From contig OZ365111.1 in the NCBI GenBank assembly GCA_977030845.1, positions 51,274,001-51,338,000 on the forward strand: 64,000 bases of DNA, in the 5' to 3' direction. This stretch comes from Fimbriosthenelais zetlandica (taxonomy: Eukaryota). Shown here piece by piece: positions 20,791 through 50,352 of this stretch. Position 1 is the first letter of the stretch; every line of letters begins with the position of its first letter. The notes under the pieces were generated by a model. The model did not search any database. It saw only the letters and a list, made by a program, of their open reading frames with translations, and had not been told where the DNA came from. Made by a program: the position numbers and the translations under genes.

Positions 20791-23700
20791 CTAGTAAGTG
20801 AAAGGCAGGTCCATCAGGCCTACTGTATGGAGGGTCTTGATGTAAGCTTCAGCAATTCTCAGCTTCAGAATACCAACAGGTATGTTGGACACGGGTACAA
20901 AGTGTGCGCCAATACTGCAAGATGAACAATGACAGTTTGTAAAGTCAATGTAAAAGTAAAACGCTAGCAAAATCAAATTCCATTTCAAAACAGATTTTTC
21001 GATCCTTACCCAGATTCCAGAGCCTCGATGAAGGCAGGTGCTGCCAGGATAGCTTTAACAGGGGTGGCGTCCAATCCAGCGGCAGGTACTAAAAGCAAAA
21101 AAAAATACATTAAACCAGAGTCATCAAGTTAAAAAAACAATCTTTAAAACTTACTTTAATGTTTTACTCACCGATTCCAACGGCTTTGCTGGTGATGATT
21201 GCTTTAACCACATGGTCAAACACGGGTAGGATGTCTCCAGCTGTCACCATCGTTGTTGTGCTGCCCGACAGTACATCAGCCAGTCTAAATGACAAAAACA
21301 ATCTACGTCTTAGCCTAAATGAAATAGCATAAGCCATGTTCCCATAAATTTTCTAAAGGCACAAGTTGAAAAGGTACATACACGTCAGCGTATTTGGCGC
21401 GGATGTTTGTGTAGATCGGATTCTCTAAGAAGACTTCAGGTGCAATGGGTGCACCAAAGGCACCAATACCAGCAGCAATGGGTGCACCAAAGGCACCAAT
21501 GTGGTTACTGAAAGGTCCAAGGCCACCAATGGGAGAACCAAAACCTCCAATACTAGCAGTTGGGTTAGCAACTGTGCCGAAGGGCATGCCATAAGGTCCA
21601 GCAGCCAGGGGAATGCCATAACCAGCCGCTATGTGGTTGCCAAAAGCACCTAGTCCACCAGCAGTAACAGGCCATGCACGGATTCCTGCTGCAGGATGGC
21701 CGAACGCAGTGAAGGGACCAATTCCAGCAGCCAGGGGAATGCCAGCAGCAATGGGGTTACCGAAATAACCCATACCAGGAGCAATGGGTTCACCAAAAGC
21801 ACCAATACCAGCAGCCAAGGGATTGCCGAAAGTACCAGCACCAAGGGGGACGCCAAAGGCAGCACCAATTCCAGCAGCAATCGGGTTGCCCAACGATCCA
21901 AATCCTCCGATAGCTCCACAAACACCGGTGGTTACACAAGGCATTGCCATGTGCAATACTGAAAAGATCGTCATAATTTTTAAAATCTAAGTCCTTTAAA
22001 AAATATTGGAAATCCCCAATGTATCAAAAAAGTCATATTCTCACCCAGTTGGCTGGCGAACCATGCTCGTACTGCGGCCATGTTTTCCATCTTGGCGATC
22101 GGTGAGAGGGCAACACGAAGCTCATTAGCCAGCACTGCAAACGGTGTGGTCAGTAGTCCTTCAATGGGAGCAATGGCGGCCATGTTGGATGCACCAATCA
22201 TCTTACCAAGCCAAGATTTCAGCACAGACGGTCCAAAGGCTGCCTCGATCCTTGCAGGTAGCTCCACTAGTATCGCTTTCTCCCACACTTTGTAAGCCAT
22301 TGGTTCGGCTCCACAGATCGCTACTTCCTTCTTGATCACCGTCATGATCTTAGCTTTCATTACAGGCAAGATGGACGCCATTGTTGCCGTTCTCCAGTCA
22401 GCTGGGATGATCTCCTTCACTACAGTCACATCTGTCGTAGTACAAGGTTAAGATATTCTAAGCAATCTCTCAGCTTTCAAACATGTTCAGTCTTTAGAAT
22501 ATTAAGCCATTACCCAAAGAGTTAAGAAAAGTCAACCTACCAGACACAGACGCTATGTGGGCAGCAATGGCCGCCTGTTCACGTTCAAACAGTGAAGTAA
22601 CTGCTGTCACAATCTCAGCCTCAGTGACAGTCTTGGTCTTGGCAGCGCTGGTCAGGGCGTAGTGAAGTACACTGGCGACAGAGGCCTTAGCCTTGATGAA
22701 GTGCACATTGACGGCACCAGGCAGCAATGCTACAAGAAGAATGCATGCAATTACATTACTTTTATCATAAGGCAACATTGAATTATGTTGGCCACAGTTG
22801 GTTTCATCTAGTATGAAATAAAGTGCAATGGTCGTGCCATACCTGCAGCGAATTTGGCGGCCACACCCTTGATGCAAGTTGCTGGGACAGCCGGTTCAAT
22901 TTCCTCAAACAGAGGACCGATCATTTGGGCGATTACTGCAGGGTGGATGCGAGCTAGTGGTTCAAATCCAGTTAAAGCATGGCCTGCCAGGATGGCTGCA
23001 ACTGCTGGGTCTGCAATTTAAATAAATACCACAACATCTGGTCTCTTATGTAGACTCTAAAATGCGGTTAGGATAACACAAATACAACTTACCATAGATT
23101 GGTGCTACACCTGCACCGGAAGCTCCCATCAGTCCCCACGCATGCGCCATAGCCATGATGGGTTTGATACTGACGATGTCCGCTGCAATGTCCATCTTTA
23201 AAGCCTTGACCACTCCACCACAAGCTCCAACCACAGGGGCGATCATAGCTACAACCTGCAAGATAGGCTACCTCAATTACTCTACCATTCAATAGCCACT
23301 ATCATATGTCAAGTGTCAGCCCAGCCTGGCTAAAAGTTCAAGAAATTCCTATCCCTTTACCTTAGCCCTTTGAGCAACCGGAATAGCAGAAGCCAAGTCC
23401 ATTGCGACTATGTTGGGAATTGCCGTGGCAAACCTGCCGAACAATTTAAACATGTATACATCAACTTAATGTAAACTAAGTATGATAATCTATTGCAATA
23501 ATCTAAATCTCAAACTGAAGTCGCTAGGCTTAGTTTGCATAATATCAGAAATTTAACCAACCTGTTCTCAATTTGAACAATGGTAGCATGAACAGCAGAT
23601 GTCAGTACTTTAGCGTCCATGGCACAGATGCTGCCAGAATCCACCTTGGCGACGATATGGTTGAAGGCATCCACGATAGCGGGACCAGTCAGGGCTCCCT

Positions 23701-25791
23701 CACGTTCTAACGTGGCCAGAGATCGCACCACCATCCAAGATACCTTCTTTACGATGGCCAGGGCTACAAACAAGCAAACAGGGTTTATTATTAAAAGGAT
23801 TTAAACATTTACATCAAGACATTAGATCCATCATTAGGTCATATTTTTTACCTTCAACAGCATCTTCTGGAAGCAATTCTTCTTGCATCAAATCTTGGAA
23901 GATAATGGGTTCATCAAGCACGGATACGTCTACACCAGGGAGCGCCATTTTGATTGCCTTCATATGTACAATGGCGACAGTCTTCAGTAGGGCTAAAAAG
24001 ATAATTCAGTTTCAGAAACTGTCCAAGTTATAATGTTTTGTGCAATCAGGAATTTGCAGGCATTGTCAATCTTACCAGCATGATAGACGGCCTTCATCTG
24101 AGCCGAACACGCGTGGGTGGCATGCGGGAAGCTGAGGACTGAAGCTCCAAAGGCTGGTACATGCAATCCTGCGATTGCACCGGCAGAAAGTGGGGCGCCA
24201 AAACTAGCAGCATAACCAGGAGCAATACCAGCAAGACCAGCAGCAGAGACAAGGCCAGGAGCGATTCTTGCGATACCAGGGACGATACCAGCATCAACGG
24301 GGCCGACAAAGCTAGGAGCGATGCCAGCAATGGCTGGAGCAGCCATTCCTACTCCAAATACTGCAGCGGGATCAGCCCGGACAACGTGCACTGCAAGAAA
24401 GTTACATCTCACTCTAGAAACCGCTACACCCAAAACTAGTTGATAAAGCTTATGGCTTGCCTAGCGTCAATTAAGACTTACCGATATGATGGATGAAGGC
24501 AGCGATGGGCAGACCACGCGGCAGAGCGAGAGCGATATGATCAGCGTTGGCGACGATGGCATGAATGATGAAATGAATGGTCTTAACGATGTCCTGGGTT
24601 ACGACAGGGGCAAGGCTAGCGTCCGTTACGATTGTCTCTACAGCTGATGTGATTTTAGCGAAGGCTGGAGCTCCAACAATCATTCCATGTTCCCTGGAAC
24701 ATTTTCAGGTCAGGTCATTCTGACAATGTTGAAATTGCCTCAACAAAGAGCCTTAAAGTTGATTTCTCATTACAACATTTCAAGGCACGATCTAGGCATC
24801 AGGTTGTGCATCCATCGACAATTAAATTACTAATAGTTTTAAATTACTAATACTCACATGGCAACCAAAGCGTCCATTTTCTCCACGAAGGCCCACAGTT
24901 GTTTCTCAGAGATCATCTCGCTACAGGGAGCGGAAGCCAAGGCGGCCATGACAGTTTTGAAGTGGGTGATGACGTCATTTCCCATGACAAGTCCTGGTTT
25001 AGTTACAGCCATCTTCACAAAGTCATCAAGACCTGCACCAATACCGGAAATGCCTGGAAAAGATTGGAAAGATTGAATTGCAGCATTGTAAACCTTCGTG
25101 AAAGTTTTAAAAACGCATCTCAATATGATCAGATAAAAGACTTACCTTTGATGATAGCGGGGTACTCAGCCAGGGTACTGACGGGCGTGAAGTAACCACC
25201 CACAATGTCATTGATGACATCACCAACAATGGCTTCAGTTTCAGACGGTATGAAAGCCAGAGACCTGAGAGCCATACCACGGATCACAGCCGAGCTCACC
25301 ACCGTGTTAGGCTTCATTAATCCTGAAATAATTACAAACCGATGAGAACAATGCTAATACAAGCAAGTCTAGTTGTATGCTGTAAATATAAAGCAGTCAC
25401 ATCTGACAAACTTATCCAAGAATTAGTCAACAACAGACGCAAGCAGCAGAATGGAAGAGAAATTCTCACCAAAAGCAATAGTGAATTTGGCGCGTTGAGG
25501 GCAGGTCATTCGGGCGGCGGTCGTCTTCCATACATCCTGTAGAGTAGCGGCTATCTGGCCGACCTCAGCCTCGGTCATGTCCACTACAGCCTTAGTGGAC
25601 ATCTCCCGCACGCCAAACACGGCGCCACTTTCTGTAAGACAAGACGAAAGTCAGTTAAAGTGGACTATCAGTCAAGTTTCTGTGGAGAATTTGAACACAT
25701 TTAATGAAATTAAATTGGAAATAAAATATGAAAACTTACCGACGCCATAGGCGACGAGTAAGGCGAGGCAGAGAGGTAGACAGCGCCACAT
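20791..25791 (-). CDS. unassigned secreted modular helical/elastin-like-linker protein, copy 1 (17 exons, 1,109 aa; most divergent copy)
   Basis: Signal peptide MWRCLPLCLALLVAYGV. Exons 25740-25791, 25470-25631, 25146-25322, 24858-25053, 24482-24693, 24076-24390, 23852-23992, 23562-23763, 23361-23433, 23093-23255, 22843-23010, 22541-22729, 22045-22431, 21382-21958, 21172-21284, 21010-21088 and 20791-20914 all have GT-AG, matching phases and sum to 3,330 nt; introns 82-164 nt; AATAAA at 20574-20579 (minus). Confidence 0.85.
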
Positions 25792-26287: not shown

Positions 26288-26371
26288 GTCAGGATGGCCG
26301 AGCGGTCTAAGGCGCTGCGTTCAGGTCGCAGTCCACTTCTGTGGGCGTGGGTTCGAATCCCACTTCTGACA
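26288..26371 (+). tRNA. tRNA-Leu(CAG), array A no.1
   Basis: 84-nt GTCAGGATGGCCGAGCGGTCTAAGGCGCTGCGTTCAGGTCGCAGTCCACTTCTGTGGGCGTGGGTTCGAATCCCACTTCTGACA; class-II cloverleaf with variable arm; A and B boxes; followed by an oligo-dT terminator. Confidence 0.97.
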
Positions 26372-26456
26372 TTTTTTTTCACCCATGTGAGTGTATGACT
26401 TGTCTTGTTTTCAATTAGTTTGTACTCGAGGGTTGGCTATTGTTCATAGATCAGCG

Positions 26457-26540
26457 GTCAGGATGGCCGAGCGGTCTAAGGCGCTGCGTTCAGGTCGCAG
26501 TCCACTTCTGTGGGCGTGGGTTCGAATCCCACTTCTGACA
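26457..26540 (+). tRNA. tRNA-Leu(CAG), array A no.2
   Basis: Identical 84-mer; TTTTT downstream. Confidence 0.97.
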
Positions 26541-26627
26541 AGTCTTTTTCCACCCATTTGATGTTATGCATTGTCTTGATTTCAATTAGTTTGTACTAGA
26601 GGGTTGCCTGTTGCTCATTGGCCAGCG

Positions 26628-26711
26628 GTCAGGATGGCCGAGCGGTCTAAGGCGCTGCGTTCAGGTCGCAGTCCACTTCTGTGGGCGTGGGTTCGAATCC
26701 CACTTCTGACA
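26628..26711 (+). tRNA. tRNA-Leu(CAG), array A no.3
   Basis: Identical 84-mer. Confidence 0.97.
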
Positions 26712-26793
26712 GGTGTTTTTCCACCCATTTGAGAGTATGCCTTGTCTTGTTTTCAATTGTACTCGAGGGTTGGCTGTAGCTCTTTGTCTACCA

Positions 26794-27855: not shown

Positions 27856-30800
27856 TCAGCTGGTAAATGAAGGCATGTCAGTCAGGCCGACTGTATGGAG
27901 GGTCGCGATGTAAGCTTCAGCAATTCTCAGCTTCAGAATACCAACAGGTATGTTGGACACGGGTACAAAGTGTGCTCCAATACTGCAAGATGAACAATGA
28001 CAGTTTGAACAAAGTCAATGTAAAGCAAAACGCTAGCAAAAAATCAAATTCCTTTTCAAAAATGAATATTTTCGATGCTTACCCAGATTCCAGAGCCTCG
28101 ATGAAGGCAGGTGCTGCCAGGATAGATTCAACAGGGGTGGCGTCTAATCCAGAAGAAGGTACTAAAATATAAAATATTACATTATACCATAGTCCATCAT
28201 TCAGCCATTTAATTAAGTAAAAATAGCACAGATGGTTCTAGTTCAAGTATTTAATCTTACCGATTCCAACAGCTTTGCTGGTGATGATGGCTTTAACCAC
28301 ATGGTCAAACACTGGTAGGATGTCTGCAGCTGTCACCATCTTGGTCGTGCTACCCACCATTACATTAGCTAGTCTGAAAGGTAAAAATATTATCAAGCCA
28401 CGTCTTACATGCCATTCTACTAGGTTCCCCAGATACCTCCCAGATATATTTATAAGGTTCTTACACGTCTGCGTATTTACTGCGGATGCTTGTGTAGATT
28501 GAATTCTTCAAGAAGACTTCAGGTGCAATGGGTGCACCAAAGGCACCAATACCAGCAGCAATGTGGTTACTGATCAGTCCAAGGCCACCAATGGGAGAAC
28601 CAAAACCTCCAATACCAGCAAGTGGGCTAGCATATGCGCCGTAGGGCATGCCATAAGGTCCAGCAGCCATGGGAATGCCAGCAGTAATGGGACTACCATA
28701 AACTCCAACTCCAGCAGCAATTGGGTTACCATAAGCTCCAACTCCAGCAGCAATTGGGTTACCAAAAGCACCAACTCCAGCAGCAATGGGGTTACCAAAA
28801 GCGTCTATTCCCATACCAACAGTCAGGGGATTGACAGAAGCAGCCATGAGGGGGTTACCGACAGCAGCAATGGGGTTACTCATAGTACCAACTGCAGCAG
28901 CTAGGGGATTGCCAAATGCGTCAATTCCAGCAGCGTCAATTCCAGCAGCAGGAATGCCTGCAACGAGGGTCTTTCCAAAAGCAGCCGCGAGGGGGCTACC
29001 AAAAGCACCAAGACCAGCAGCGATGGGGTTACCAATAGCGTTCATTCCAATACCAGCAGCCAGGGGATGGCCAAGAGCAGCCGCAACGGGGAGGCCAAAG
29101 GCAGCACCAATTCCAGCAGCCAGGGGGTGAGCTAAGGCTCCAATTCCAGCAGCTATAGGGATTCCAGCAGCAATGGGACTGCCATAAGGTCCAATAGCTC
29201 CAATAGCTCCACAAGCTCCGGTGGCTACACAGGGCATTGTCATGTGCATAACTGAAAAGATTATCATATTTAAAATAGGTTTTTAAACATTTGGACATTC
29301 AGACTAAATTTTTTAGCTTTTAAATTCTCACCCAGTTGGCTGGCGAACCATGCTCGTACTGCGGCCATGTTTTCCATCTTGGCGATCGGTGAGAGGGCAA
29401 CACGAAGCTCATTAGCCAGCACTGCAAACGGTGTGGTCAGAAGTCCTTCAATGGGAGCAATGGCGGCCATGTTGGATGCACCAACGATCTTACCAAGCCA
29501 AGACTTTAGCACAGATGGTCCAAAGGCTGCCTCGATCCTTGCAGGTAATTCCACCAGTAGAGTCTTCACTGAAGCTTTGTAAGCCATTGGTTCAGCTCCA
29601 CAGATCGCTACTTCCTTCTTGATCACTGTCATGATCTTAGCTTTCATTACAGGCAAGATGGACGCCATTGTCGCCGTTCTCCAGTCAGCTGGGATGATCT
29701 CCTTGATGGCCTTCACTACAGTCACATCTGATAAATCAAGGTTCAGACATAACCAATTTATCATATTTTCACTTTACCATAGGAAACTTTGGGCTTTGGC
29801 CCAATTTGGCAACACTAAAGCCAAGCCATTTGTGTTGTATTGAAACACAAGCTACCAGCCTATGACAACTTACCAGCCACAGATGCTATGTGGGCCGCAA
29901 TGGCCGCCTGTTCACGTTCAAACAGTGAAGTAACTGCTGTCACAATCTCAGCCTCAGTGACAGTCTTAGTCTTGACAGCGCTGGTCATGGCGTAGTGAAG
30001 TACACTGGCGACAGAGGCCTTAGCCTTGATGAAGTGGGCATTGACGGCACCAGGCAGCAATGCTACAATTACAAAAATAACATTCCAAATGCATGTAGCA
30101 ATGCAATCATTACGCTTAAGCTACAGAATACGGACCATTCCATAGCAGGTGAAATCCATTGCCATACCTGCAGCGAATTTGGCGGCGACACCCTTGATGC
30201 AAACTGCTGGGACAGCTGCTTCTATTTCCTTAACCAGGGGCACGATCATTTGGGCGATTACTGCAGGGTGGATGCGAGCTAGTGGTTCAAATCCAGTCAA
30301 AGCATGGGCTGCCAGGATGGCTGCAACTGAGGGGTCTGCAATTGATATTAATACCAACAATATGTATTAGGTCCAACCATATATTAGGTCCATTTTATAG
30401 ACACTGAAGAGTCTTTAAGATAGCACCAATACAACTTACCATAGATTGGTGCTACACCTGCACCGGAAGCTCCCATCAGTCCCCACGCATGCGCCATAGC
30501 CATGATGGGTTTGATACTGACGATGTCCGCTGCAATGTCCATCTCCAAAGCCTCGATCACTCCACCACAAGCTCCAACAACAGGGGCGATCATAGCTACA
30601 ACCTGTAAGAAAAGTATTGCCTCAATTACTCTACAATTCAATAGCCACCATCCTTTTATCACTCCCTTATGTGTTAAGTTGAACAAGTTTAGTAAATTCA
30701 TTTCAGTTACCTTGGTCTTTTCAGCAACAGGCATTACAGATGCCAGGTCCCTTGCGATCATGTTTGGTATTCCAACAGCAAACCTTTTAAAGAAACAAGG

Positions 30801-33513
30801 CGAGTACAATTGAAGGTATATCAGGCTAATCAACTTAATAGATTCCGACTACCTAATGGCAAGTCCCCACTTTTGAATCTAAAATATTTTATACCAACCC
30901 GTTCTCAATCTTGACAATGGTAGCATGAACAGCCGACGTCAGTACTTTAGCATCCATGGCACAGATGCTGCCAGAATCCACCTTGGTGACGATATGGTTG
31001 AAGGCATCCACGATAGCGGGACCAGTCAGGGCTCCCTCACGTTCTAACGTGGCCAGAGATCGCACCACCATCCAAGACACCTTCTTTACGATGGCCAGGG
31101 CTGCAAATAAAACATGGTTTATTAATACAGCCACGTAGGTATATTATATCCTAGCTTGAAATATATTCAAGACAAGTCCACAACATTTGTTACCTTCGAC
31201 AGCGTCTTCTGCGACAAGTTCCTGTTTGATCAAATCTTGGAAGAAGGCAGGTTCAGCAAGCGCCGATAGGTCTACACTTGGGAGCGCCATTTTGATGGCC
31301 TTGGTATGAACAATGGTGATGGTCTTCAGTAGTGCTGAAAGATCGAACAACTCAGATAAGAAATCTACATACAAATGTCCGGAACTAACATTAAGTCAAA
31401 ATTGACATTCAATAATAATTTGCAGGCATTGTTAATCTTACCAGCATGATAGACAGCCTTCATCTGAGCCGAGCAGGCGTGGGTGGCAGGCGGGAAGCTG
31501 AGGACTGAAGCTCCAAAGCCAGGAACAGGGAATCCAGGGGCAATTCCAGCGATACCAGGGGCAATTCCAGCGATACCAGGGGCAATTCCAGCGATACCAG
31601 GGGCAATTCCAGCGATACCAGGGGCAATTCCAGCGATACCAGGGGCAATTCCACCGATACCAGGGGCAATTCCACCGATACCAGGGGCAATTCCACCGAT
31701 ACCAGGGGCAATTCCACCGATACCAGGGGCAATTCCACCGATACCAGGGGCAATTCCACCGATACCAGGGGCAATTCCACCGATACCAGGGGCAATTCCA
31801 GCAAGACCGGGGGCAGCGATACCACCAAGACCAGCAGCAAGTGGGGCAGCAATACCAGACGCAACACCAGGGGCAATTCCAGCTTCAGGCATAAAGGCTC
31901 CCATGCCAGCAATACCAGGAGCGATGCCAGCAATGGCCGGCGCAGCAATACCAGGGGCTATTCCAGGAAGACTAGCAGTAGCGGCAATTCCAGCTAGAGG
32001 GGCAGCAATACCAGGCGCAATTCCAGCTAGAGGGGCAGCTATACCAGGAGCGATGCCAGCAATGATTGGGGCAGCAATACCAGACATACCAGCTCCATAT
32101 ACTGCAGCAGTATCAGCCCGGACAACGTGCACTGCAAGAAAATTACCATCTCACTAGCAAATTAAAGCCAAAAATATTATCAAGTGCAACATTTTATTAA
32201 TCTTGTTCCGAGCTCAGCTTCTAACCAGGCAAAATGACTTACCGATATGATGGATGAAGGCAGCGATGGGCAGACCACGCGGCAGAGCGAGAGCGATATG
32301 ATCAGCGTTGGCGACGATGGCATGAATGATGAAATGAATGGTCTTAACGATGTCCTGGGTTACGACAGGGGCAAGGCTAGCGTCCGTTACGATGGTCTCT
32401 ACAGCGGATGTAATTTTAGCTACGGCTGGAGCGCCAACAATCATTCCAGGTCCCCTGAAACATTCATTACAGAACACTGAATTTTATGCTTTTATCTAAA
32501 GCCGACTGTTTAAATCTGATATAGCAGAATCCATCAAATTTTGAGCCAGATGAGCAATTCTAAGGCAATTAGAAATTAACCAAATTCATTAACTCACATG
32601 GCGACCACAGCGTCCATGTTCTCCACGAAGGCCCACAGTTGTTTCTCAGAGATCATCTCGCTACATGGAGCGGAAGCCAAGGCGGCCATGACAGTTTTGA
32701 AATGAGCGATGACGTCATTTCCCATGACGAGTCCTGGTTTACTTACAGCCATCTTCACAAAGTCATCAAGTCCTGCACCAATACCGGAAATGCCTGGAAA
32801 AGATCATCGAAATGCAGCATTGTAAACCTTGCTGGAAGTTTAAATATCAATTCAGTCACATCTCAATAAGATCAGATCCACAATTTACCTTTGATCATAG
32901 CGGGGTACTCAGCCAGGGTACTGACGGGCGTGAAGTAACCACCCACAATGTCATTGATCACATCACCAACAATGGCTTCAGTGTCAGACGGTATGAAAGC
33001 CAGAGACCTGAGAGCCATACCACGGATCACAGCCGAGCTCACCACCGTGTTAGGCTTCATTAATCCTGAAATAATTACAAACTGATTAGAACAAGTAAAC
33101 TAATCAAGATATAGGCCATTTACGTGTCAAAAACAGATCCAGTAGAAGAGGAATTTGGAAGGTTATGCGCTGTAGACGAATAGAGAAATTCTCACCAAAA
33201 GCAAGAGTGAATTTGGCGCGTTGAGGGCAGGTCATTCCGGCGGCGGTCGTCCTCCATACATCCTGTAGAGTAGCGGCTATCTGGCCGACCTCAGCCTCGG
33301 TCATGTCCACTACAGCCTTAGTGGACATCTCCCGCACGCCAAAGAAGGCGCGACTTTCTGTAAGACAAGACGACTCAGTTAAAAAGTAGACAATCGGTCA
33401 AGTTTGCGTGGAGAATTTCAAATTTAATGAAATTAAATCGAAATTAAATATGAAAACTTACCGACGCCATAGGCGACAAGTAAGGCGAGGCAGAGAGGTA
33501 GACAGCGCCACAT
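27856..33513 (-). CDS. same family, copy 2 (~1,310 aa)
   Basis: Same exon series and splice sites as copy 1; exon 6 = 690 nt with (IGGIAPG)7(IAGIAPG)5; exon 14 = 787 nt; ends ...TDMPSFTS*. Confidence 0.85.
31534..31806. repeat. 21-bp coding minisatellite (I[G/A]GIAPG x12 plus a flanking unit) in copy 2 exon 6
   Basis: CCAGGGGCAATTCCA(G/C)CGATA: 5 GCG-type then 7 CCG-type units on the + strand. Confidence 0.95.
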
Positions 33514-36635: not shown

Positions 36636-39600
36636 TCAGCTGGTAAATGAAGGCATGTCAGTCAGGCCGACTGTATGGAGGGTCGCGATGTAAGCTTCAG
36701 CAATTCTCAGCTTCAGAATACCAACAGGTATGTTGGACACGGGTACAAAGTGTGCGCCAATACTGCAAGAGAAAGATTACATTAGTCGCTATACAAGACA
36801 AGAAATTCTAATGTCGCTTTTAGACCTTGGGATGCAAGACTAGGAACCCTCAGTATTAAAATTAAAATTCCATTTCAAATACAATTTGATTCTTACCCAC
36901 ATTCCAGAGCCTCGATGAAGGCAGGTGCCGACAGGATAGATTCAACAGGGGTGGCGTCCAATCCAGAGGCAGGTACTAAAAGCAAAATTACATTATGTAT
37001 ATAGTCCATCGTTCAGCTGTTTCAGTACCTTAAACTAACCAGAGATGGTTCTAGTTCAAGTATTCAGTATCTTACCGATTCCAATGGTTTTGCTGGTAAT
37101 GATGGCTTTAACCACATGGTCAAACACTGGTAGGATGTCTGAGGCTGTCACCATCTTGGTCGTGCTACCATACATTACATTAGCCAATCTGAAAATGTTA
37201 AAACATTATCAAGCCACGTCTTACATGCCATAATACTAGGTTCCCCAGATAACTCCAAGATATATTTATAAGATTTAAATATTCTTACACGTCTGCGTAT
37301 TTACTGCGGATGCTTGTGTAGATTGAATTCTTCAAGAACACTTGAGGTGCAATGTGTGCACCAATACCAGCAGCAATGGGGTTACTGATCAGTCCTAGCC
37401 CACCAATGGGAGAACCAAAACCTCCAATACCAGCAAGTGGGCTAGCATATGCGCCGTAGGGCATGCCGTAAGGTCCAGCAGCCATGGGAATGCCAGCGGT
37501 AATGGGACTACCAAAAGCTCCAACTCCAACAGCAATGGGGTTACCAAAAGCACCAACTCCAGCAGCAATGGGGTTACCAAAAGCACCAACTCCAGCAGCA
37601 ATGGGACTACCGAAAGCGTCTATTCCCATACCAACAGTTAGGGGATTGAGAGAAGCAGCCGCGAGGGGGTTACCGACAGCACCAAATCCTGCAGCAATGG
37701 AGTTGCCAATAGTACCAACTGCAGCAGCTAGGGGATTGCCAAATGCGTCAATTCCAGCAGCAGGAATGCCAGCAACGAGGGGCGTTCCAAAAGCACCAAA
37801 ACCAGCAGCGATGGGGTTACCAATAGCGTTCATTCCAATACCAGCAGCCAGGGGATTGCCAAGTGCAGCCGCAACGGGGAGGCCAAAGGCAGCACCAATT
37901 CCAGAAGCAATAGGGATTCCAGCAGCAATGGGATTGCCATAAGGTCCCATTGCTCCAATAGCTCCACAAGCACCGGTGGCTACACAAGGCATTGTCATGT
38001 GCATTACTGAAAAGATTATCATCATTTTTAAATAAAGTTTTAACATTAGGAAATTCAGACTCAATGTTATTAACTTTTAAATTCTCACCCAGTTGACTGG
38101 CGAACCATGCTCGTACTGCGGCCATGTTTTCCATCTTGGCGATCGGTGAGAGGGCAACACGAAGCTCATTAGCCAGCACTGCAAACGGTGTGGTCAGTAG
38201 TCCTTCAATGGGAGCAATGGCGGCCATGTTGGATGCACCAATGATCTTACCAAGCCAAGACTTCAGCACAGATGGTCCAAAGGCTGCCTCGATCCTTGCA
38301 GGTAGCTCTACTAGTATCGCTTTCTCCCACGCTTTGTAAGCCATTGGTTCAGCTCCACAGATCGCTACTTCCTTCTTGATCACCGTCATGATCTTAGCTT
38401 TCATTACGGGCAAGATGGACGCCATTGTCGCCGTTCTCCAGTCAGCTGGGATAATCTCCTTGATGGCCTTCACTACAGTCACATCTGTAATAAATCAAGT
38501 TTCAGACCCGACTAATATATTTTCAGCTTACCATATAAATATGTGCTTAGGCCCAATTTGACAAAACTAAAGCCAAGCCATTTGTGTTGTATTGAAACAC
38601 AAGCTACCAGCCTATGACAACTTACCAGTCACGGACGCTATGTGGGCAGCAATGGCCGCCTGTTCACGTTCAAACAGTGAAGTAACTCCTGTCACAATCT
38701 CAGCCTCAGTGACAGTCTTGGTCTTGACAGCGCTGGTCATGGCGTATTGAAGTACACTGGCGACAGAGGCCTCAGCCTTGATGAAGTGGGCATTGACGGC
38801 ACCAGGCAGCAAAGCTACAAGCACAAAAATCAAATTCCAAATGCATGTAGCAATGCAGTCATTACGGTTCTAGCCACAGAATATGGCCCATTCCATTCGA
38901 GGTGAAATCTATTGCATACCTGCAGCGAATTTGGCGGCCACACCCTTGATGCAAACTGCTGGGACCGCTGCTTCTATTTCCTTAACCAGGGGCACGATCA
39001 TTTGGGCGATTACTGCAGGGTGGATGCGAGCTAGTGGTTCAAATCCAGTCAAAGCATGGCCTGCCAGGATAGCTGCAACTGCTGGGTCTGCAATTGACAT
39101 CAATACCAACAATTATGCCATATATTCGGCCATTTTATATACACTAAAGCTTCTATAAGACAAATCGAACTAGTCTTACCATAGATTGGTGCTACACCTG
39201 CACCGGAAGCTCCCATCAGTCCCCACGCATGCGCCATAGCCATGATGGGTTTGATACTGACGATGTCCGCTGCAATGTCCATCTTCAAAGCCTCGACCAC
39301 TCCACCACAAGCTCCAACCACTGGGGCGATCATAGCTACAACCTGTAGGATAAACATTGCCTCAATTACTCTACCATTCAATAGCCACCATCAGTCCCTT
39401 CTGTGTTAAGTTGAACAAGTTCATTAAATTCATTTCAGTTACCTTGGCCTTTTCAGCAACAGGCATTACGGATGCCAGGTCCCGTGCGATCATGTTTGGT
39501 ATTCCAACAGCGAACCTTTTAAGAAACAAGGCGAGTACAACTGAAGGGATATCAGGCTAATCAACTTAATAGATTCCGACTATCTATAATCAAACTCTGG

Positions 39601-42350
39601 CAAGTCCCCACTTTTGAATCTAAACTAAATATTTTTATACCAACCCGTTCTCAATCTTGACAATGGTAGCATGAACAGCAGACGTCAGTGCTTTAGCATC
39701 CATGGCACAGATGCTGCCAGAGTCCACCTTGGTGACGATATGGTTGAAGGCATCCACGATAGCGGGACCAGTCAGGGCTCCCTCACGTTCTAACGTGGCC
39801 AGAGATCGCACCACCATCCAAGATACCTTCTTTACGATGGCCAGGGCTGCAAACAAAACAAATTAAAACGGATTTCAACGTAAGGTATAATAAAATCTAG
39901 CTCTTCATATTCAAGACAAGCCCACGACATTTTGTTACCTTCGACAGCGTTTTCTGCAACAAGTTCCTGTTGGATCAAATCTTGGAAGAAGGCAGGTTCA
40001 GCAAGCGCTGCTAGGTCTACACTTGGGAGCGCCATTTTGATGGCCTTCGTATGAACAATGGTGATAGTCTTCAGTAGGGCTGAAAGATCAAACAACTCTG
40101 ATAATAAATCTACATACAAATGTGCCGAACTAACATTAAGTTAGATTAACAATGCCTGCAAATCAATTTTGATGGCACCAATGTTCAATCTTACCAGCAT
40201 TGTAAACAGCCTTCATCTGAGCCGAGCAGGCGTGGGTGGCAGGCGGGAAGCTGACGACTGAAGCACCAAAGCCAGGTACAGGCAATCCAGGGGCAATACC
40301 AGCCAAACCAGCAGCAGAGATACCAGGGGCAATACCAGCCAAACCAGCAGCAGAGATACCAGGGGCAGCGATACCAGGGGCAATACCAGCCATACCACCA
40401 AGACCAGGGGCAATTCCAGGAGTAGCGATACCAGCAAGACCAGCAGCAGAGATACCAGGGGCTATTCCAGCCAGACCAGGGGCAGCGATACCAGGGACAA
40501 TTCCAGCCAGACCAGGGGCAGCGATACCAGGGACAATTCCAGCAAGACCAGGGGCAGCGATACCAGGGACAATTCCACCAAGACCAGCAGCAAGTGGGGC
40601 AGCAATACCAGATGCAACACCAGGGGCGATTCCAGCAATTCCAGCTTCAGGCATAGAGGCTCCCATGCCAGCAAAACCGGGGGCAATTCCAGCTAGAGGG
40701 GTAGCAATACCAGGAGCGATGCCAGCAATGGCCGGGGCAGCAATACCAGCGGCAATTCCAGCAAGACCAGCAGTAGCGGCAATTCCAGCTTCAGGCATAG
40801 AGGCTGCCATACCAGCAATACCGGGTGCAATTCCAGCTAGTGGAGAAGCAATACCAGGAGCGATGCCAGCAGCAATACCAGGAGCGATACCAGCAATCGC
40901 CGGGGCAGCAATACCAGACATACCAGCTCCATATACTGCAGCAGTATCAGCCCGGACAACATGCACTGCAAGAAAATTACCATCTCACTTGTAAAGTAAA
41001 GACAAAACTATAAAGTCCAACCATTTGATTAATCTCGTTCCGAGCTCATCTTCTATCCAGGCAACTAAGACTTACCGATGTGATGGATGAAGGCAGCGAT
41101 GGGCAGACCACGCGGCAGAGCGAGAGCGATATGATCAGCGTTGGAGACGATGGCATGAATGATGAAATGAATGGTCTTAACGATGTCCTGGGTTACGACA
41201 GGGGCAAGGCTAGCGTCCGTTACGATTGTCTCTACAGCTGATGTAATTTTAGCTACGGCTGGAGCGCCAACAATCCTTCCATGTTCCCTGAAACATTCGT
41301 TACAAAATACTCTGGATTTTTTGCTTTTATCTCAAGCTAACCCTAGGAGCTAGGCACAGAAGGACTGGACCAGAATTTGATGGCCGTAGATTGGCTTTTG
41401 AATCCGACATAAGCCATTAGAGATTTACCAAATTCAGCTACTCACATGGCTACAACAGCGTCCATTTTCTCCACGAAGTCCCACAGTTCTTCCTCAGAGA
41501 TCATCTCGCTACAGGGAGCGGACGCCACGGCGGCCATGACAGTTTTGAAGTGGGCGATGACGTCATTTCCCATGACGAGTCCTGGTCTAGTTACAGCCAT
41601 CTTCACAAAGTCATCAAGTCCTGCACCAATACCGGAAATGCCTGAAAAAAAAAAAAATCATAAAATGCAGTATTGTAATCCTTTGGAGGTTTCCAACAAA
41701 TCTCCATAAGATCAGAGCCACGATTTACCTTTGATCATAGCGGGGTACTCAGCCAGGGTACTGACGGGCGTGAAGTAACCACCCACAATGTCATTGATGA
41801 CATCACCAACAATGGCTTCAGTTTGAGACGGTATGAAAGCCAGAGACCTGAGAGCCATACCACGGATCACAGCCGAGCTCACCACCGAGTTAGGCTTCAT
41901 TAATCCTGAAATAATTACAAACTGATTAGTACAAGTAAAATAAGCAAGATAAAGGCCATTTACAGTTTCAAAACAGATCCAGTAGAAGAGTTATTTAAAA
42001 GCTATGCACTGTAGAGGAATACAGAAATTCTCACCAAAAGCAATCGTGAATTTGGCGCGTTGAGGGCAGGTCATTCCGGCGGCGGTCGTCCTCCATACAT
42101 CCTGTAGAGTAGCGGCTATCTGGCCGACCTCAGCCTCGGTCATGTCCACTACAGCCTTAGTGGACATCTCCCGCACGCCAAACACGGCGCGACTTTCTGT
42201 AAGTCAAGACAAGTCAGTTAAAGTGGACTGTCAATTTTCTGTGGCGAATTTGAACAAATTTAATGGAATTAAATTGGAAATAAAATATGAAAACTTACCG
42301 ACGCCATAGGCGACGAGTAAGGCGAGGCAGAGAGGTAGACAGCGCCACAT
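36636..42350 (-). CDS. same family, copy 3 (~1,310 aa)
   Basis: Same exon series; exon 6 = 771 nt, exon 14 = 718 nt; no frame disruption seen. Confidence 0.85.
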
Positions 42351-44473: not shown

Positions 44474-47400
44474 TCAGCTGGTAAATGAAGGCATGTCAGT
44501 CAGGCCGACTGTATGGAGGGTCGCGATGTAAGCTTCAGCAATTCTCAGCTTCAGAATCCCAACAGGTATGTTGGACACGGGTACAAAGTGTGCGCCAATA
44601 CTGCAAGAGACAGATAACAGTCGCTATACCAGAAACATATTGTCATGCAACATTTAGACCATGGGATGCAAGCCAAGACACCCTCATGGTTAATTTCAAA
44701 TACTTCATTTCGATCCTTACCCAGATTCCAGAGCCTCGATGAAGGCAGGTGCTGCCAGGATAGATTCAACAGGGGTGGCTTCCAATCCTGCGACAGGTAC
44801 TAAAAGCCAAATTACATTATGTATATAGTCCATCATTCAGCTGTTTTAGTAAGTTAGACTAACCAGAGACGGTTCTAGTTCAAGTATTCAGTCTCTTACC
44901 GATTCCAACGGCTTTGCTGGTGATGATGGCTTTAACCACGTGGTCAAACACGGGTAGGATGTCTGAGGCCGCCACCATCTTGGTCGTGCTACCATACATT
45001 ACATTAGCCAGTCTGAAAAGGCAAAACAATATCAAGCCACGTCTTACATGCCATAATACAAGGTACCCCAGATATATCCCAGATATATTTATAAGGTTCT
45101 TACATGTCTGCGTATTTACTGCGGATGCTTGTGTAGATTGAATTCTTCAAGAAGACTTCAGGTGCAATGTGTGCACCAATACCAGCAGCAATGGGGTTAC
45201 TGATCAGTCCAAGGCCACCAATGGGAGAACCAAAACCTCCAATACCAGCAAGTGGGCTAGCATATGCGCCGTAGGGCATGCCATATGGTCCAGCAGCCAT
45301 GGGAATGCCAGCGGTAATGGGACTACCAAAAGCACCCACTCCAGCAGCAATGGGGTTACCAAAAGCACCCACTCCAGCAGCAATGGGGTTACCAAAAGCA
45401 CCCACTCCAGCAGCAATGGGGTTACCAAAAGCACCCACTCCAGCAGCAATGGGGTTACCAAAAGCACCCACTCCAGCAGCAATGGGGTTACCAAAAGCAC
45501 CCACTCCAGCAGCAATGGGGTTACCAAAAGCACCCACTCCAGCAGCAATGGGGTTACCAAAAGCACCCACTCCAGCAGCAATGGGGTTACCAAAAGCACC
45601 CACTCCAGCAGCAATGGGGTTACCAAAAGCACCCACTCCAGCAGCAATGGGGTTACCAAAAGCACCCACTCCAGCAGCAATGGGGTTACCAATAGTACCA
45701 ATTGCAGCAGCTAGGGGATTGCCAAATGTGTCAATTCCAGCAGCAGGAATGCCAGCAACGAGGGGCGTTCCAAAAGCACCAAAACCAGCAGCGATGGGGT
45801 TACCAATAGCGTTGATTCCAATACCAGCGGCCAGGGGATGGCCAAGAGCAGCCGCAACGGGGAGGCCAAAAGCAGCACCAATTCCAGAAGCAATAGGGAT
45901 TCCAGCAGCAATGGGATTGCCATAAGGTCCCATTGCTCCAATAGCTCCAATAGCTCCACAAGCACCGGTGGCTACGCAAGGCATTGTCATGTGCATTACT
46001 GAAAAGATTATAATCATTTTAAAATAAAGTTTAAACATTAGGACATTCAGACTAAATTTTTTAAATTTCAAAAAATCTCACCCAGTTGGCTGGCGAACCA
46101 TGCTCGTACTGCGGCCATGTTTTCCATCTTGGCGATCGGTGAGAGGGCAACACGAAGCTCATTAGCCAGCACTGCAAACGGTGTGGTCAGTAGTCCTTCA
46201 ATGGGAGCAAAGGCGGCCATGTTGGCTGCACCAATGATCTTACCAAGCCAAGACTTCAGCACAGATGGTCCAAAGGCTGCCTCGATCCTTGCAGGTAGCT
46301 CTACTAGTATCGCTTTCTCCCACGCTTTGTAAGCCATTGGTTCAGCTCCACAGATGGCTACTTCCTTCTTGATCACCGTCATGATCTTAGCTTTCATTAC
46401 GGGCAAGATGGACGCCATTGTCGCTGTTCTCCAGTCAGCTGGGATAATCTCCTTGATGGCCTTCACTACAGTCACATCTGTAATAAATCAAGTTTCAGAC
46501 CCGACTAATATATTTTCAGCTTACCATATAAATATGTGCTTAGGCCCAATTTGACAAAACTAAAGCCAAGCCATTTGTGTTGTATTGAAACACAAGCTAC
46601 CAGCCTATGACAACTTACCAGTCACGGACGCTATGTGGGCAGCAATGGCCGCCTGTTCACGTTCAAACAGTGAAGTAACTGCTGTCACAATCTCAGCCTC
46701 AGTGACAGTCTTGGTCTTGACAGCGCTGGTCATGGCGTATTGAAGTACACTGGCGACAGAGGCCTCAGCCTTGATGAAGTGGGCATTGACGGCACCAGGC
46801 AGCAAAGCTACAAGCACAAAAATCAAATTCCAAATGCATGTAGCAATGCAGTCATTACGGTTCTAGCCACAGAATATGGCCCATTCCATTCGAGGTGAAA
46901 TCTATTGCATACCTGCAGCGAATTTGGCTGCCACACCCTTGATGCAAACTGCTGGGACCCCTGCTTCTATTTCCTTAACCAGGGGCACGATCATTTGGGC
47001 GATTACTGCAGGGTGGATGCGAGCTAGTGGTTCAAATCCAGTCAAAGCATGGCCTGCCAAGATGGCTGCAACTGCTGGGTCTGCAATTGACATCAATACC
47101 AACAATTATGCCATATATTCGGCCCTTTTATATACACTAAAGCTTCTATAAGACAAATCGAACTTGTCTTACCATAGATTGGTGCTACACCTGCACCGGA
47201 AGCTCCCATCAGTCCCCACGCATGCGCCATAGCCATGATGGGTTTGATACTGAGGATGTCCTCTGCAATGTCCATCTTCAAAGCCTCGACCACTCCACCA
47301 CAAGCTCCAACCACTGGGGCGATCATAGCTACAACCTGTAGGATAAACATTGCCTCAATTACTCTACCATTCAATAGCCACCATCAGTCCCTTCTGTGTT

Positions 47401-50352
47401 AAGTTGAACAAGTTCATTAAATTCCTTTCAGTTACCTTGGCCTTTTCAGCAACAGGCATTACAGATGCCAGGTCCCGTGCGATCATGTTTGGTATTCCAA
47501 CAGCAAACCTATTAAAGAAACAAGGCGAGTACAACTGAAGGGATATCAGGCTAATCAACTTAATAGATTCCGACTATCTATAATCAAACTCTGGCAAGTC
47601 CCCACTTTTGAATCTAAACTAAATATTTTTATACCAACCCGTTCTCAATCTTGACAATGGTAGCATGAACAGCAGACGTCAGTGCTTTAGCATCCATGGC
47701 ACAGATGCTGCCAGAATCCACCTTGGTGACGATATGGTTGAAGGCATCCACGATAGCGGGACCAGTCAGGGCACCTTCACGTTCTAACGTGGCCAGAGAT
47801 CGCACCACCATCCAAGACACCTTCTTTACGATGGCCAGGGCTGCACACAAAACAAATTAAAACGGATTTCAACACAAGGTATAATAAAATCTAGCTCTTC
47901 ATATTCAAGACAAGCCCACGACATTTGTTACCTTCGACAGCGTTTTCTGCAACAAGTTCCTGTTGGATCAAATCTTGGAAGAAGGCAGGTTCAGCAAGCG
48001 CTGCTAGGTCTACACTTGGGAGCGCCATTTTGATGGCCTTCGTATGAACAATGGTGATAGTCTTCAGTAGGGCTGAAAGATCAAACAACTCTGAAAATAA
48101 ATCTACATACAAATGTGCCTAACTAACATTAAGTTAGATTGAACATTGGTGCCATCAAAATTGATTTGCAGGCATTGTTAATCTTACCAGCATTGTAAAC
48201 AGCCTTCATCTGAGCCGAGCAGGCGTGGGTGGCAGGCGGGAAGCTGACGACTGAAGCACCAAAGCCAGGTACAGGCAATCCAGGGGCAATACCAGCCAAA
48301 CCAGCAGCAGAGATACCAGGGGCAATACCAGCCAAACCAGCAGCAGAGATACCAGGGGCAATACCAGCCAGACCAGGGGCAATACCAGCCAGACCAGGGG
48401 CAGCGATACCAGGGGCAATACCAGCCATACCACCAAGACCAGGGGCAATTCCAGGAGTAGCGATACCAGCAAGACCAGCAGCAGAGATACCAGGGGCTAT
48501 TCCAGCCAGACCAGGGGCAGCGATACCAGGGACAATTCCAGCAAGACCAGGGGCAGCGATACCAGGGACAATTCCACCAAGACCAGCAGCAAGTGGGGCA
48601 GCAATACCAGATGCAACACCAGGGGCGATTCCAGCAATTCCAGCTTCAGGCATAGAGGCTCCCATGCCAGCAAAACCGGGGGCAATTCCAGCTAGAGGGG
48701 TAGCAATACCAGGAGCGATGCCAGCAATGGCCGGGGCAGCAATACCAGCGGCAATTCCAGCAAGACCAGCAGTAGCGGCAATTCCAGCTTCAGGCATAGA
48801 GGCTGCCATACCAGCAATACCGGGTGCAATTCCAGCTAGTGGAGAAGCAATACCAGGAGCGATGCCAGCAGCAATACCAGGAGCGATACCAGCAATCGCC
48901 GGGGCAGCAATACCAGACATACCAGCTCCATATACTGCAGCAGTATCAGCCCGGACAACATGCACTGCAAGAAAATTACCATCTCACTTGTAAAGTAAAG
49001 ACAAAACTATAAAGTCCAACCATTTGATTAATCTCGTTCCGAGCTCATCTTCTATCCAGGCAACTAAGACTTACCGATATGATGGATGAAGGCAGCGATG
49101 GGCAGACCACGCGGCAGAGCGAGAGCGATATGATCAGCGTTGGCGACGATGGCATGAATGATGAAATGAATTGTCTTAACGATGTCTTGGGTTACGACAG
49201 GGGCAAGGCTAGCGTCCGTTACGATGGTCTCTACAGCTGATGTGATTTTAGCGACGGCTGGAGCTCCAACAATCATTCCATGTTCCCTGTAACATTCATT
49301 AAAAAATACTCTGGATTTTTTTGCTTTTATCTCAAGCTAACCGTATGAGCTAGGCACAGAAAGACTCGACCAGAATTTGATGGCCGTAGGCTTTTGTATC
49401 CGACATAAGCCATTAGAGATTTACCAAATTCAGCTACTTACATGGCTACAACAGCGTCCATTTTCTCCACGAAGGCCCACAGTTCTTCCTCAGAGATCAT
49501 CTCGCTACAGGGAGCGGACGCCACGGCGGCCATGACAGTTTTGAAGTGGGCGATGACGTCATTTCCCATGACGAGTCCTGGTTTAGTTACAGCCATCTTC
49601 ACAAAGTCATCAAGTCCTGCGCCAATACCGGAAATGCCTGGAAAAGATCATTGAATTGCAGCATAGTAAACCTCCGTGAAAGTTTTAATAACGCGTCTCA
49701 ATATGATCAGATAAAAGACTTACCTTTGATGATAGCGGGGTACTCAGCCAGGGTACTGACGGGCGTGAAGTAACCACCCACAATGTCATTGATGACATCA
49801 CCAACAATGGCTTCAGTTTCAGACGGTATGAAAGCCAGAGACCTGAGAGCCATACCACGGATCACAGCCGAGCTCACCACCGTGTTAGGCTTCATTAATC
49901 CTGAAATAATTACAAACTGATTAGTACAAGTAAAATAAGCAAAATATAGGCCATTTACGGGTCCAAAATAGACCCAGTAGCACCGACATTTAGAGGTAAA
50001 GTCTTTTGTACCCAGCCATTTACGAATAGAAGAATTCTCACCAAAAGCAATAGTGAATTTGGCGCGTTGAGGGCAGGTCATTCCGGCGGCGGTCGTCCTC
50101 CATACATCCTGTAGAGTAGCGGCTATCTGGCCGACCTCAGCCTCGGTCATGTCCACTATAGCCTTAGTGGACATCTCCCGCACGCCAAACACGGCACGAC
50201 TTTCTGTAAGTCAACACAAAAGTCAGTTAAAGTGGAATTTCTGTGGAGAATTTGAACAACTTTAATGAAATTAAGTTGGAAATAAACTATAAAAACTTAC
50301 CGACGCCATAGGCGACGAGTAAGGCGAGGCAGAGAGGTAGACAGCGCCACAT
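44474..50352 (-). CDS. same family, copy 4 (~1,370 aa)
   Basis: Same exon series; exon 6 = 777 nt, exon 14 = 895 nt with (GNPIAAGVGAF)11. Confidence 0.85.
45328..45690. repeat. 33-bp coding minisatellite x11 (GNPIAAGVGAF) in copy 4 exon 14
   Basis: 11 perfect AAAAGCACCCACTCCAGCAGCAATGGGGTTACC units. Confidence 0.95.

What the first reader, a model, noticed from the sequence alone, without database searches (positions are those of the whole stretch)
22045..25631. Hidden internal repeat: three (plus a partial fourth) homologous ~230-aa modules marked by conserved Cys and intron positions
Seen in sequence (copy 1, also in the others): exons 2, 6 and 11 each end exactly 10 residues after a Cys at a phase-1 intron (CPQRAKFTIAF|GLMK, CSAQMKAVYHA|ALLK, CIKGVAAKFAA|ALLP). 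The next segments align as GLVMGNDVITHFKTVMAAL..C (exon 4), GALTGPAIVDAFNHIVAKV..C (exon 8), TATMASILPVMKAKIMTV..C (exon 13) and MVTAGDILPVFDHVVKAI (exon 15). Each full module later carries ASLAPVV, AMIAPVV or AAIAPIE, ends near AF/AW, and is followed by a G/A/P linker (long in exons 6 and 14, a vestigial GASGAGVAP in exon 10). Inference: an ancient exon-block duplication of one helical domain with a single internal disulfide.
Basis: partly seen in the sequence, partly recalled or inferred. Interest (0 to 1): 0.78.

Follow-up and report, generated by a model that had tools for sequence, protein, structure and literature searches.

The report
Secreted protein with triplicated helical module
A five-copy tandem animal gene encodes a secreted protein whose three ~240-residue helical domains share cysteine spacing and intron positions, which points to an old internal triplication, although their sequences no longer resemble each other and the family has no detectable relatives elsewhere.

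Summary
The finding lies in a real minus-strand gene of 16-17 exons (ATG at 25791). It is the first of five tandem copies in the window. The gene encodes a signal peptide, three all-helical modules of about 240 aa, hydrophobic Gly/Ala/Pro linkers and a short tail.

Residue-level similarity between modules is not better than chance:
- pairwise Smith-Waterman z 0-2.1
- hhalign of family profiles, probability below 2%
- exon blocks at matching positions in different modules score no better than non-matching ones (p=0.37)

Gene structure does support a triplication:
- Each module has two invariant Cys.
- A phase-1 intron sits exactly 11 codons after Cys1 in all three modules.
- A phase-2 intron sits 21-22 codons after Cys2 in all three. 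For module 3 this intron survives only in at least 17 divergent paralogues elsewhere in the genome.
- Monte Carlo for this pattern gives p about 2.5e-5.
- Modules 1 and 3 each span 244 profile columns, with Cys at 42/153 and 44/153.
- AlphaFold helix patterns of the last block agree between modules 1 and 3.

The fourth partial module is unsupported. The disulfide and whole-module folds could not be tested. The family has no Pfam, sequence or fold match. It is probably a lineage-restricted, elastomer-like extracellular protein. Interest is moderate.

The parts
21011..25791 (-). Gene copy 1, ATG to end of exon 16. An in-frame TAA directly follows exon 16. An alternative GT donor would splice to a further exon near 20914, so the 3' end is uncertain.
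   Evidence: Exon model with AG/GT sites and continuous frame
25740..25791 (-). Exon 1: hydrophobic signal peptide, phase-1 donor
   Evidence: Read directly from the translation; identical in all five copies
24482..25631 (-). Module 1 = exons 2-5 (162, 177, 196, 212 nt; phases 1-1, 1-1, 1-2, 2-1). Cys1 codon 25503-25501, Cys2 codon 24925-24923.
   Evidence: Both Cys invariant in 13 family members. Exon 5 folds as helices 8-23, 25-56, 63-69.
24161..24390 (-). Linker 1 (5' part of exon 6): Gly/Ala/Pro/Ile-rich. Expanded in copies 2-5 into GIAPGIA/GIAPGIG heptads (21-nt DNA period, up to 18 units).
23093..24160 (-). Module 2 = last ~28 codons of exon 6 plus exons 7-10 (141, 202, 73, 163 nt). Cys1 codon 24109-24107, Cys2 codon 23626-23624. 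Ends in the vestigial linker GASGAGVAP.
22045..23010 (-). Module 3 = exons 11-13 (168, 189, 387 nt). Cys1 codon 22876-22874, Cys2 codon 22315-22313. The ancestral phase-2 intron site lies in the Arg codon 22252-22250; the intron is lost here and present in the paralogues.
   Evidence: Exon 13 folds as helices 17-41, 46-64, 67-78, 83-112, 117-127.
21382..21958 (-). Exon 14: a conserved CxxxxxC start, then linker 3 (Gly/Ala/Pro/Ile/Phe-rich). In copies 2-5 it is expanded into an 11-residue GAFGNPIAAGV repeat (33-nt period, up to 12.7 units).
21011..21284 (-). Homology to the modules is not supported.
28084..33513 (-). Gene copy 2, same exon order and phases
36901..42350 (-). Gene copy 3
44722..50352 (-). 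Gene copy 4
52530..58088 (-). Gene copy 5

Best explanation
The stretch is most of a gene for a secreted protein of about 1,070 residues. The protein is built from three tandem all-helical modules of about 240 residues. These arose by an ancient triplication of a four-exon block with phases 1-1, 1-1, 1-2 and 2-1. Each module keeps two invariant cysteines about 100-115 residues apart, which probably form one intradomain disulfide (inferred). Each also keeps the ancestral intron positions. The residues themselves have diverged beyond statistical recognition. The triplication predates the expansion of a family of at least 25 genes in this genome.

The modules are joined by hydrophobic, proline- and glycine-containing low-complexity linkers. 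In this five-gene tandem cluster the linkers have expanded into elastin-like repeats (GIAPGIA heptads and an 11-mer, GAFGNPIAAGV).

Proposed working (inferred, not shown): folded, disulfide-stapled helical bundles act as assembly or cross-linking knots, and the disordered hydrophobic linkers act as entropic springs or coacervating segments. The product would be an elastomer-like extracellular material protein of a lophotrochozoan, possibly annelid, animal.
For: - Gene model and five copies with intact frames and canonical splice sites. Ka/Ks of 0.20-0.36 between copies shows purifying selection.
- Intron A sits at Cys1+11 codons, phase 1, in all three modules. Intron B is phase 1 in all three. 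Intron C is phase 2 at Cys2+22, +21 and +21; for module 3 it is seen in at least 17 divergent paralogues.
- Monte Carlo p=2.5e-5 for the two Cys-intron triples.
- Both Cys are invariant in all members. Modules 1 and 3 each span 244 profile columns, with Cys at 42/153 and 44/153.
- Each exon of copy 1 finds its counterpart, in the same order, in seven fully covered divergent paralogues. About ten partly fetched ones agree over the exons covered. The architecture therefore predates the family expansion.
- AlphaFold shows an all-helical structure. Counted from intron C, the last block has helices at 8-23, 25-56 and 63-69 in module 1, against 7-18, 23-52 and 57-67 in module 3.
- Weak but consistently positive anchored profile scores appear for the long-helix region (z 1.05, 1.67, 1.91) and after Cys1 (z 1.74, 0.56, 2.29).
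- Linker repeats and composition. Hydrophobic P/G/M/F-rich linkers also occur in the paralogues.
Against: - No significant sequence or profile similarity between modules in any test.
- The intron-Cys statistic was defined after seeing the data. Phase 1 dominates this gene (11 of 16 introns), which makes phase agreement cheaper; the simulation kept the phase mix.
- Whole-module folds were not compared and the Cys-Cys distance was not measured.
- The helix-pattern agreement rests on two half- or quarter-domain models of pLDDT 70-77.
- No RNA or protein evidence: no sequencing runs were listed.
- The function is inferred from composition alone.
Confidence: 0.65

Rival explanations
1. The three helical regions are unrelated segments of one long helical secreted protein. 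The shared Cys-intron offsets, similar lengths and similar helix patterns are coincidence in a phase-1-biased, Ala/Val/Ile-rich gene.
For: All sequence tests are negative: SW z 0-2.1, hhalign probability below 2%, matching versus non-matching blocks p=0.37, Cys-anchored z at or below 0.1. Exon-level jackhmmer never crosses modules.
Against: The Monte Carlo probability of the two Cys-intron triples is 2.5e-5. In addition, modules 1 and 3 match in all four exon lengths to within 16 nt, in all phases and in both Cys columns. Helix boundaries in the last block are congruent.
Confidence: 0.2
2. The true repeat unit is smaller. Each exon-sized block of about 60 residues would be a helical-hairpin unit, so the protein is a string of about 12-14 such units, and the '240-aa module' is a higher-order grouping.
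For: MAFFT spontaneously aligns the two halves of exon 13 (13a and 13b) on each other, with a shared Trp and an ARVMA-like stretch. Adjacent blocks within a module give z of about 2.4-2.5. Exon sizes are similar (162-212 nt).
Against: z values of 2-3 are expected among 66 comparisons. Column shuffling also destroys helical periodicity, which inflates z for any pair of helices. The Cys occur once per two blocks, not once per block. The phases differ between blocks (1-1, 1-2, 2-1).
Confidence: 0.1
3. The modules are hydrophobic-ligand or lipid-binding helical bundles, so the protein is a carrier in the manner of apolipophorin-type or polyprotein lipid binders rather than a structural material.
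For: The helices are very hydrophobic, with Ala+Val+Ile at 36-40% and charged residues at only about 13%. The protein is secreted. The fold is a generic up-down helical bundle.
Against: There is no match to any lipid-binding family in Pfam, PDB or AFDB. The long elastin-like linkers, and their rapid expansion in an amplified gene cluster, fit a material protein better.
Confidence: 0.15

Closest known systems
Tropoelastin (vertebrate elastin precursor)
   Same: A secreted protein that alternates hydrophobic Pro/Gly-containing repeats with short helical domains. The GIAPGIA repeat resembles the elastin hexapeptide VGVAPG. Domains are encoded by separate exons that mostly split codons in the same phase, which makes duplication and expansion easy (elastin facts from my own knowledge, not tested here).
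   Different: There is no sequence homology: Pfam and all searches were blank. There are no Lys-Ala cross-linking domains. The folded parts here are large helical modules of about 240 aa with a Cys pair, not short KA helices.
Spider aciniform and tubuliform spidroins (about 200-aa helical repeat domains joined by Gly/Ser/Ala linkers)
   Same: Large tandem all-helical globular repeat units alternate with low-complexity linkers in a secreted material protein (own knowledge).
   Different: Spidroin repeats are nearly identical to each other and lie in giant single exons. Here the modules have no residual similarity, the gene has 16 introns, and no spidroin N- or C-terminal domain was detected.
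Abductin and other Gly/Met/Phe-rich invertebrate elastomers
   Same: The paralogues' linkers are Met/Ala/Pro/Gly/Phe-rich short repeats such as APAVMG and AFGAP. Their composition recalls molluscan abductin (own knowledge).
   Different: Abductin is a small protein that is nearly all repeat, without folded helical modules. No homology was tested or found.

Membership tests
Internal tandem domain repeat made by exon-block duplication | Equivalent intron positions and phases in each repeat | tested here: met
   Intron A at Cys1+11 (phase 1) in 3 of 3 modules. Intron B phase 1 in 3 of 3. Intron C at Cys2+21/22 (phase 2) in 3 of 3 when the paralogues are used for module 3. Monte Carlo p=2.5e-5.
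Internal tandem domain repeat made by exon-block duplication | Significant sequence or profile similarity between repeats | tested here: not met
   SW z 0-2.1. hhalign probability below 2%, P 0.025-0.28. Matching versus non-matching blocks p=0.37. Anchored scores at the null level.
Internal tandem domain repeat made by exon-block duplication | Same fold in each repeat | tested here: inconclusive
   Only the last block could be compared. Helices lie at 8-23/25-56/63-69 in module 1 and 7-18/23-52/57-67 in module 3, counted from intron C. Whole modules could not be folded because a spliced sequence has no reference.
Internal tandem domain repeat made by exon-block duplication | Conserved structural residues at equivalent positions (the Cys pair) | tested here: met
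   Both Cys have frequency 1.0 in every family member. They sit at columns 42/153 (module 1) and 44/153 (module 3), with spacing 101 in module 2.
Elastin-like elastomeric proteins | Tandem hydrophobic Pro/Gly-containing short repeats | tested here: met
   GIAPGIA/GIAPGIG heptads with a 21-nt period (13-18 units). A 33-nt period encoding GAFGNPIAAGV (about 12 units). Linker composition A29 G18 P11 and G26 A21 P11 I11.
Elastin-like elastomeric proteins | Lys-Ala cross-linking domains, or homology to tropoelastin | tested here: not met
   No KAAK-type segments are seen in the translation. Pfam gave no hit.
Elastin-like elastomeric proteins | Elastic recoil or coacervation of the protein | not testable with these tools
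   Needs recombinant protein.
Any curated protein family (Pfam) or solved fold | A profile or structural match above threshold | tested here: not met

The most novel reading that the evidence does not exclude
This would be an undescribed, lineage-restricted family of at least 25 genes for secreted elastomer-like material proteins. The proteins are built from a triplicated, disulfide-stapled all-alpha domain with no known fold relative. The domains alternate with fast-evolving elastin- or abductin-like hydrophobic repeats. Module 1 carries an invariant His cluster that might give metal-mediated cross-links. If so, it is a new class of invertebrate biomaterial protein.
Probability: 0.3. Interest if true: 0.6.

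Novelty: new variant of a known kind. Interest (0 to 1): 0.4.

Why it matters
If the triplication is real, this is a clean example of domain repeats whose history survives only in intron positions, cysteine spacing and helix architecture after all sequence signal has gone. Such a case is useful for calibrating repeat-detection methods.

The family also looks like an unstudied group of extracellular proteins that combine folded helical knots with elastin-like springs. It is amplified in tandem and has linker repeats that vary in length. That makes it a candidate source of new elastomeric biomaterial motifs in a lophotrochozoan. Neither point overturns current understanding.

Tried and rejected
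- **Pairwise module alignments.** Smith-Waterman with shuffles: not significant.
- **Exon-level jackhmmer** over the window plus 18 paralogue regions: it finds each exon's counterpart in other genes but never crosses modules.
- **hhalign of 13-21-sequence module profiles:** probability below 2%.
- **Block-level profile alignment,** matching versus non-matching blocks: no difference.
- **Cys-anchored ungapped profile scores:** at the null level. Only two sub-regions were weakly positive.
- **Semi-global profile alignment against circular shifts:** uninformative, because the scores collapse to end overlaps.
- **Search of 1.84 billion representative proteins** with the exon-13 profile: one hit, a bacterial Ig-repeat protein matched five times on a short stretch. 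I rejected it as spurious.
- **The search for homologous proteins** with the exon-13 and exon-5 family alignments: nothing.
- **ESM Atlas:** no usable hit.
- **Synteny in a related species.** A locus (L050), reached through the neighbouring GPCR, holds no homologue.
- **Sequencing runs** for RNA evidence: none was listed.
- **Literature search** for the repeat motifs: only unrelated epitope papers.
- **Second batch of paralogue flanks:** About ten paralogues are therefore only partly covered.
- **Whole-module folding and complex prediction:** left out. A spliced module has no reference, long letters may not be pasted, and no binding claim is made.
- **Nematode polyprotein lipid binders and spidroin terminal domains:** considered from memory only. 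No Pfam support.
Full report
**What is there.**
The finding lies on the minus strand, inside a multi-exon animal gene. I built the model from open frames and splice sites. The ATG is at 25791. Exon 1 (52 nt) encodes a hydrophobic signal peptide. Fifteen or sixteen further exons follow, with AG/GT borders throughout up to exon 15. The protein is about 1,070-1,085 residues.

- The finding's coordinates (22045-25631) run from exon 2 to exon 13.
- The window holds five tandem copies, about 8 kb apart, with ATGs at 25791, 33513, 42350, 50352 and 58088. All have the same exon order and phases.
- The helical exons are 90-98% identical between copies, with Ka/Ks of 0.20-0.36. These are constrained coding genes.
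- Neighbouring genes are rhodopsin-type GPCRs, C2H2 zinc-finger genes and an LRR gene. The closest named GPCR relatives are bivalve proteins at 25-39% identity, and unnamed ENA assemblies reach 47%.
- The host is therefore a metazoan, most likely a lophotrochozoan. I did not test that.

**The literal observation.**

- Exons 2, 6 and 11 each end 10 residues after a Cys, at a phase-1 intron.
- The quoted helix segments are present, as are the ASLAPVV, AMIAPVV and AAIAPIE motifs and the AF/AW ends.
- The long Gly/Ala/Pro linkers in exons 6 and 14 and the short GASGAGVAP in exon 10 are present.

**Is there sequence similarity between the modules? No.**

- For deeper profiles I searched the window's own genome (447 Mb). 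It holds a sixth close copy on contig C69 and at least 18 divergent paralogues on six chromosome-scale contigs. I fetched 10-kb stretches around them.
- Exon-by-exon jackhmmer finds every exon's counterpart in the paralogues, in the same order, but never jumps from one module to another.
- hhalign of the resulting module profiles (13, 13, 21 and 20 sequences) gives probabilities below 2% and P of 0.025-0.28.
- I cut the modules at their introns into four blocks, A to D. Blocks at matching positions in different modules score no better than non-matching blocks (Mann-Whitney p=0.37).
- Ungapped profile scores anchored on the conserved Cys are at or below the null (z -1.8 to +0.1).
- Two sub-regions are weakly positive: the 16 columns after Cys1, and the long helix plus last helix of block D (z about 1-2.3). 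I chose these windows after the fact, so they carry little weight.
- The Pro of AAIAPIE is specific to the window cluster. Paralogues have Gly or Ala at that column.

**Gene structure supports a triplication.**
Each module has exactly two Cys that are invariant in every family member.

| Feature | Module 1 | Module 2 | Module 3 |
|---|---|---|---|
| Intron A, split codon after Cys1 (phase 1) | +11 | +11 | +11 |
| Exon following intron A (nt), closed by phase-1 intron B | 177 | 141 | 189 |
| Intron C, split codon after Cys2 (phase 2) | +22 (AT\|G) | +21 (AG\|G, Arg) | +21 (AG\|G, Arg) |

- In the window copies and the C69 copy, exon 13 is one 387-nt exon. In all divergent paralogues it is split at that Arg codon. 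The window cluster has therefore lost this intron.
- In the ancestral structure each module is a four-exon block with phases 1-1, 1-1, 1-2 and 2-1. Lengths are 162/177/196/212 nt (module 1) and 168/189/about 180/about 207 nt (module 3). Module 2 is (end of exon 6)/141/202/73+163 nt.
- Modules 1 and 3 each occupy 244 profile columns, with Cys at 42/153 and 44/153.
- I ran a Monte Carlo that scatters the 16 introns at random, keeps the phase mix, and allows any offset within 40 codons of any of the nine mature Cys. Three Cys share one offset and phase in 0.55% of trials. That pattern plus a second triple (tolerance of one codon) occurs in 2.5e-5 of trials.
- The statistic was framed after seeing the data, but the margin is large.

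**Structure.**
Only uninterrupted coding DNA can be handed to the structure tool, so whole modules could not be folded. I did not paste spliced sequences.

- Exon 13 (blocks C+D of module 3, 128 aa) with a 34-row family alignment gives an all-helical model: pLDDT 69.8, pTM 0.53, helices 17-41, 46-64, 67-78, 83-112 and 117-127.
- Exon 5 (block D of module 1, 70 aa, 13 rows) gives pLDDT 76.7 and helices 8-23, 25-48/50-56 and 63-69.
- Counted from intron C, block D reads 8-23, 25-56, 63-69 in module 1 and 7-18, 23-52, 57-67 in module 3. Both show a medium helix, a helix of about 30 residues and a short aromatic helix. This is congruent but not decisive.

**Family and novelty.**

- Pfam gives nothing above cut-off on ten exons.
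- PDB profile searches give nothing.
- A HMMER search of 1.84 billion representative proteins gave one spurious bacterial repeat protein.
- Two alignment-based searches of the 5.8-billion-cluster collection gave nothing.
- The ESM Atlas gave nothing.
- A related species' locus next to the orthologous GPCR has no homologue.

With these tools the family is confined to this genome. This may partly reflect poor coverage of spliced eukaryotic proteins in the collections.

**Linkers and likely function.**

- Linker 1 (exon 6) is a GIAPGIA/GIAPGIG heptad array with a 21-nt period. It reaches 13-18 units in copies 2 and 5, and copies 3 and 4 carry longer composite units.
- Linker 3 (exon 14) is an 11-mer, GAFGNPIAAGV, with a 33-nt period and up to 12.7 units in copies 4 and 5. 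Copy 1 has the shortest arrays.
- Linker compositions are A29 G18 P11 and G26 A21 P11 I11 F8. The helical modules are Ala/Val/Ile-rich with few charges.
- The divergent paralogues also have hydrophobic Pro/Gly/Met/Phe-rich linkers, with other repeat motifs such as APAVMG, APEMAF and AFGAP. Low-complexity linkers are therefore ancestral, and each subfamily has evolved its own.

A signal peptide, the lack of any obvious membrane anchor, folded Cys-pair helical bundles, elastin-like hydrophobic PG repeats, tandem gene amplification and rapid change in repeat length together point to an extracellular elastomer-like material protein. The bundles would serve as assembly or cross-link nodes and the linkers as springs. 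This is inference from composition and architecture only. A hydrophobic-ligand carrier role is a weaker alternative.

**The 'partial fourth module'.**
Exons 15-16 are conserved across the family, but exon 15 has phases 2->1, whereas the block it was aligned with is 1->2. hhalign puts it in a different register at P=0.025. I treat it as a conserved C-terminal tail of unknown relationship.

**Verdict.**
The feature is real. The interpretation (ancient exon-block duplication of a helical, Cys-pair domain) is probably right, at about 0.65-0.75, but for reasons other than those given. The 'hidden' sequence repeat cannot be shown. Whole-module folding is the decisive missing step.

Noticed in passing
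window 26288-26877, 34011-35462, 42846-43271, 50849-51102 (+ strand): Arrays of 4, 9, 3 and 2 identical-type tRNA-Leu(CAG) genes with a 171-nt period sit in every spacer between the five gene copies. The ~8-kb tandem unit is therefore gene plus tRNA array. CTG is the commonest Leu codon in the genes (131 of 380), but no link was tested.
   Followed up: partly
window 24482-24693 (exon 5, module 1 block D) and its counterparts in other copies: An invariant or nearly invariant His/Asp cluster across 13 family members: H40, H44, N49-A50-D51, H52 and H68. H40 and H44 lie on one helix face in the model. It may be a metal site. It is absent from modules 2 and 3.
   Followed up: partly
window 22045-22431 and exon 13 of copies 2-5; loci L007-L030: The window cluster and the C69 copy have lost the phase-2 intron that splits exon 13 in all divergent paralogues. 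Copy 1 also lacks three residues (KAI) near the exon's start, and copies 2-5 use an acceptor 9 nt further upstream.
   Followed up: yes
L031 (G000:C69:1-10000): An unplaced 13-kb contig carries one and a half more near-identical copies of the gene. It is probably an unassembled part of the same tandem array.
   Followed up: partly
window 21900-21958 (start of exon 14) and paralogues: A conserved CxxxxxC motif (P-C-[AV]-x-x-G-[VA]-C-G) opens exon 14 in all family members examined. It adds two more conserved Cys, outside the modules.
   Followed up: no
window 21005-21015 and 20864-20914: The 3' end is ambiguous. An in-frame TAA directly follows exon 16. A GT donor one base earlier could instead splice to a conserved downstream exon, giving a GIGAHFVP... 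tail. The short frame conserved in all copies might equally be untranslated sequence.
   Followed up: partly
window exon 13 halves; alignment A2: MAFFT aligns the second half of exon 13 onto the first half, with a shared Trp and an ARVMA-like stretch. This hints at a smaller repeat of about 60 aa, but its statistics are weak (z about 2.5).
   Followed up: partly
window 59331-60494 and 61745-62992 (+); 16221-17369 and 18017-19921 (+); 11240-12304 (+): Two intronless rhodopsin-type GPCR genes, two C2H2 zinc-finger ORFs and an LRR ORF flank the cluster.
   Followed up: partly
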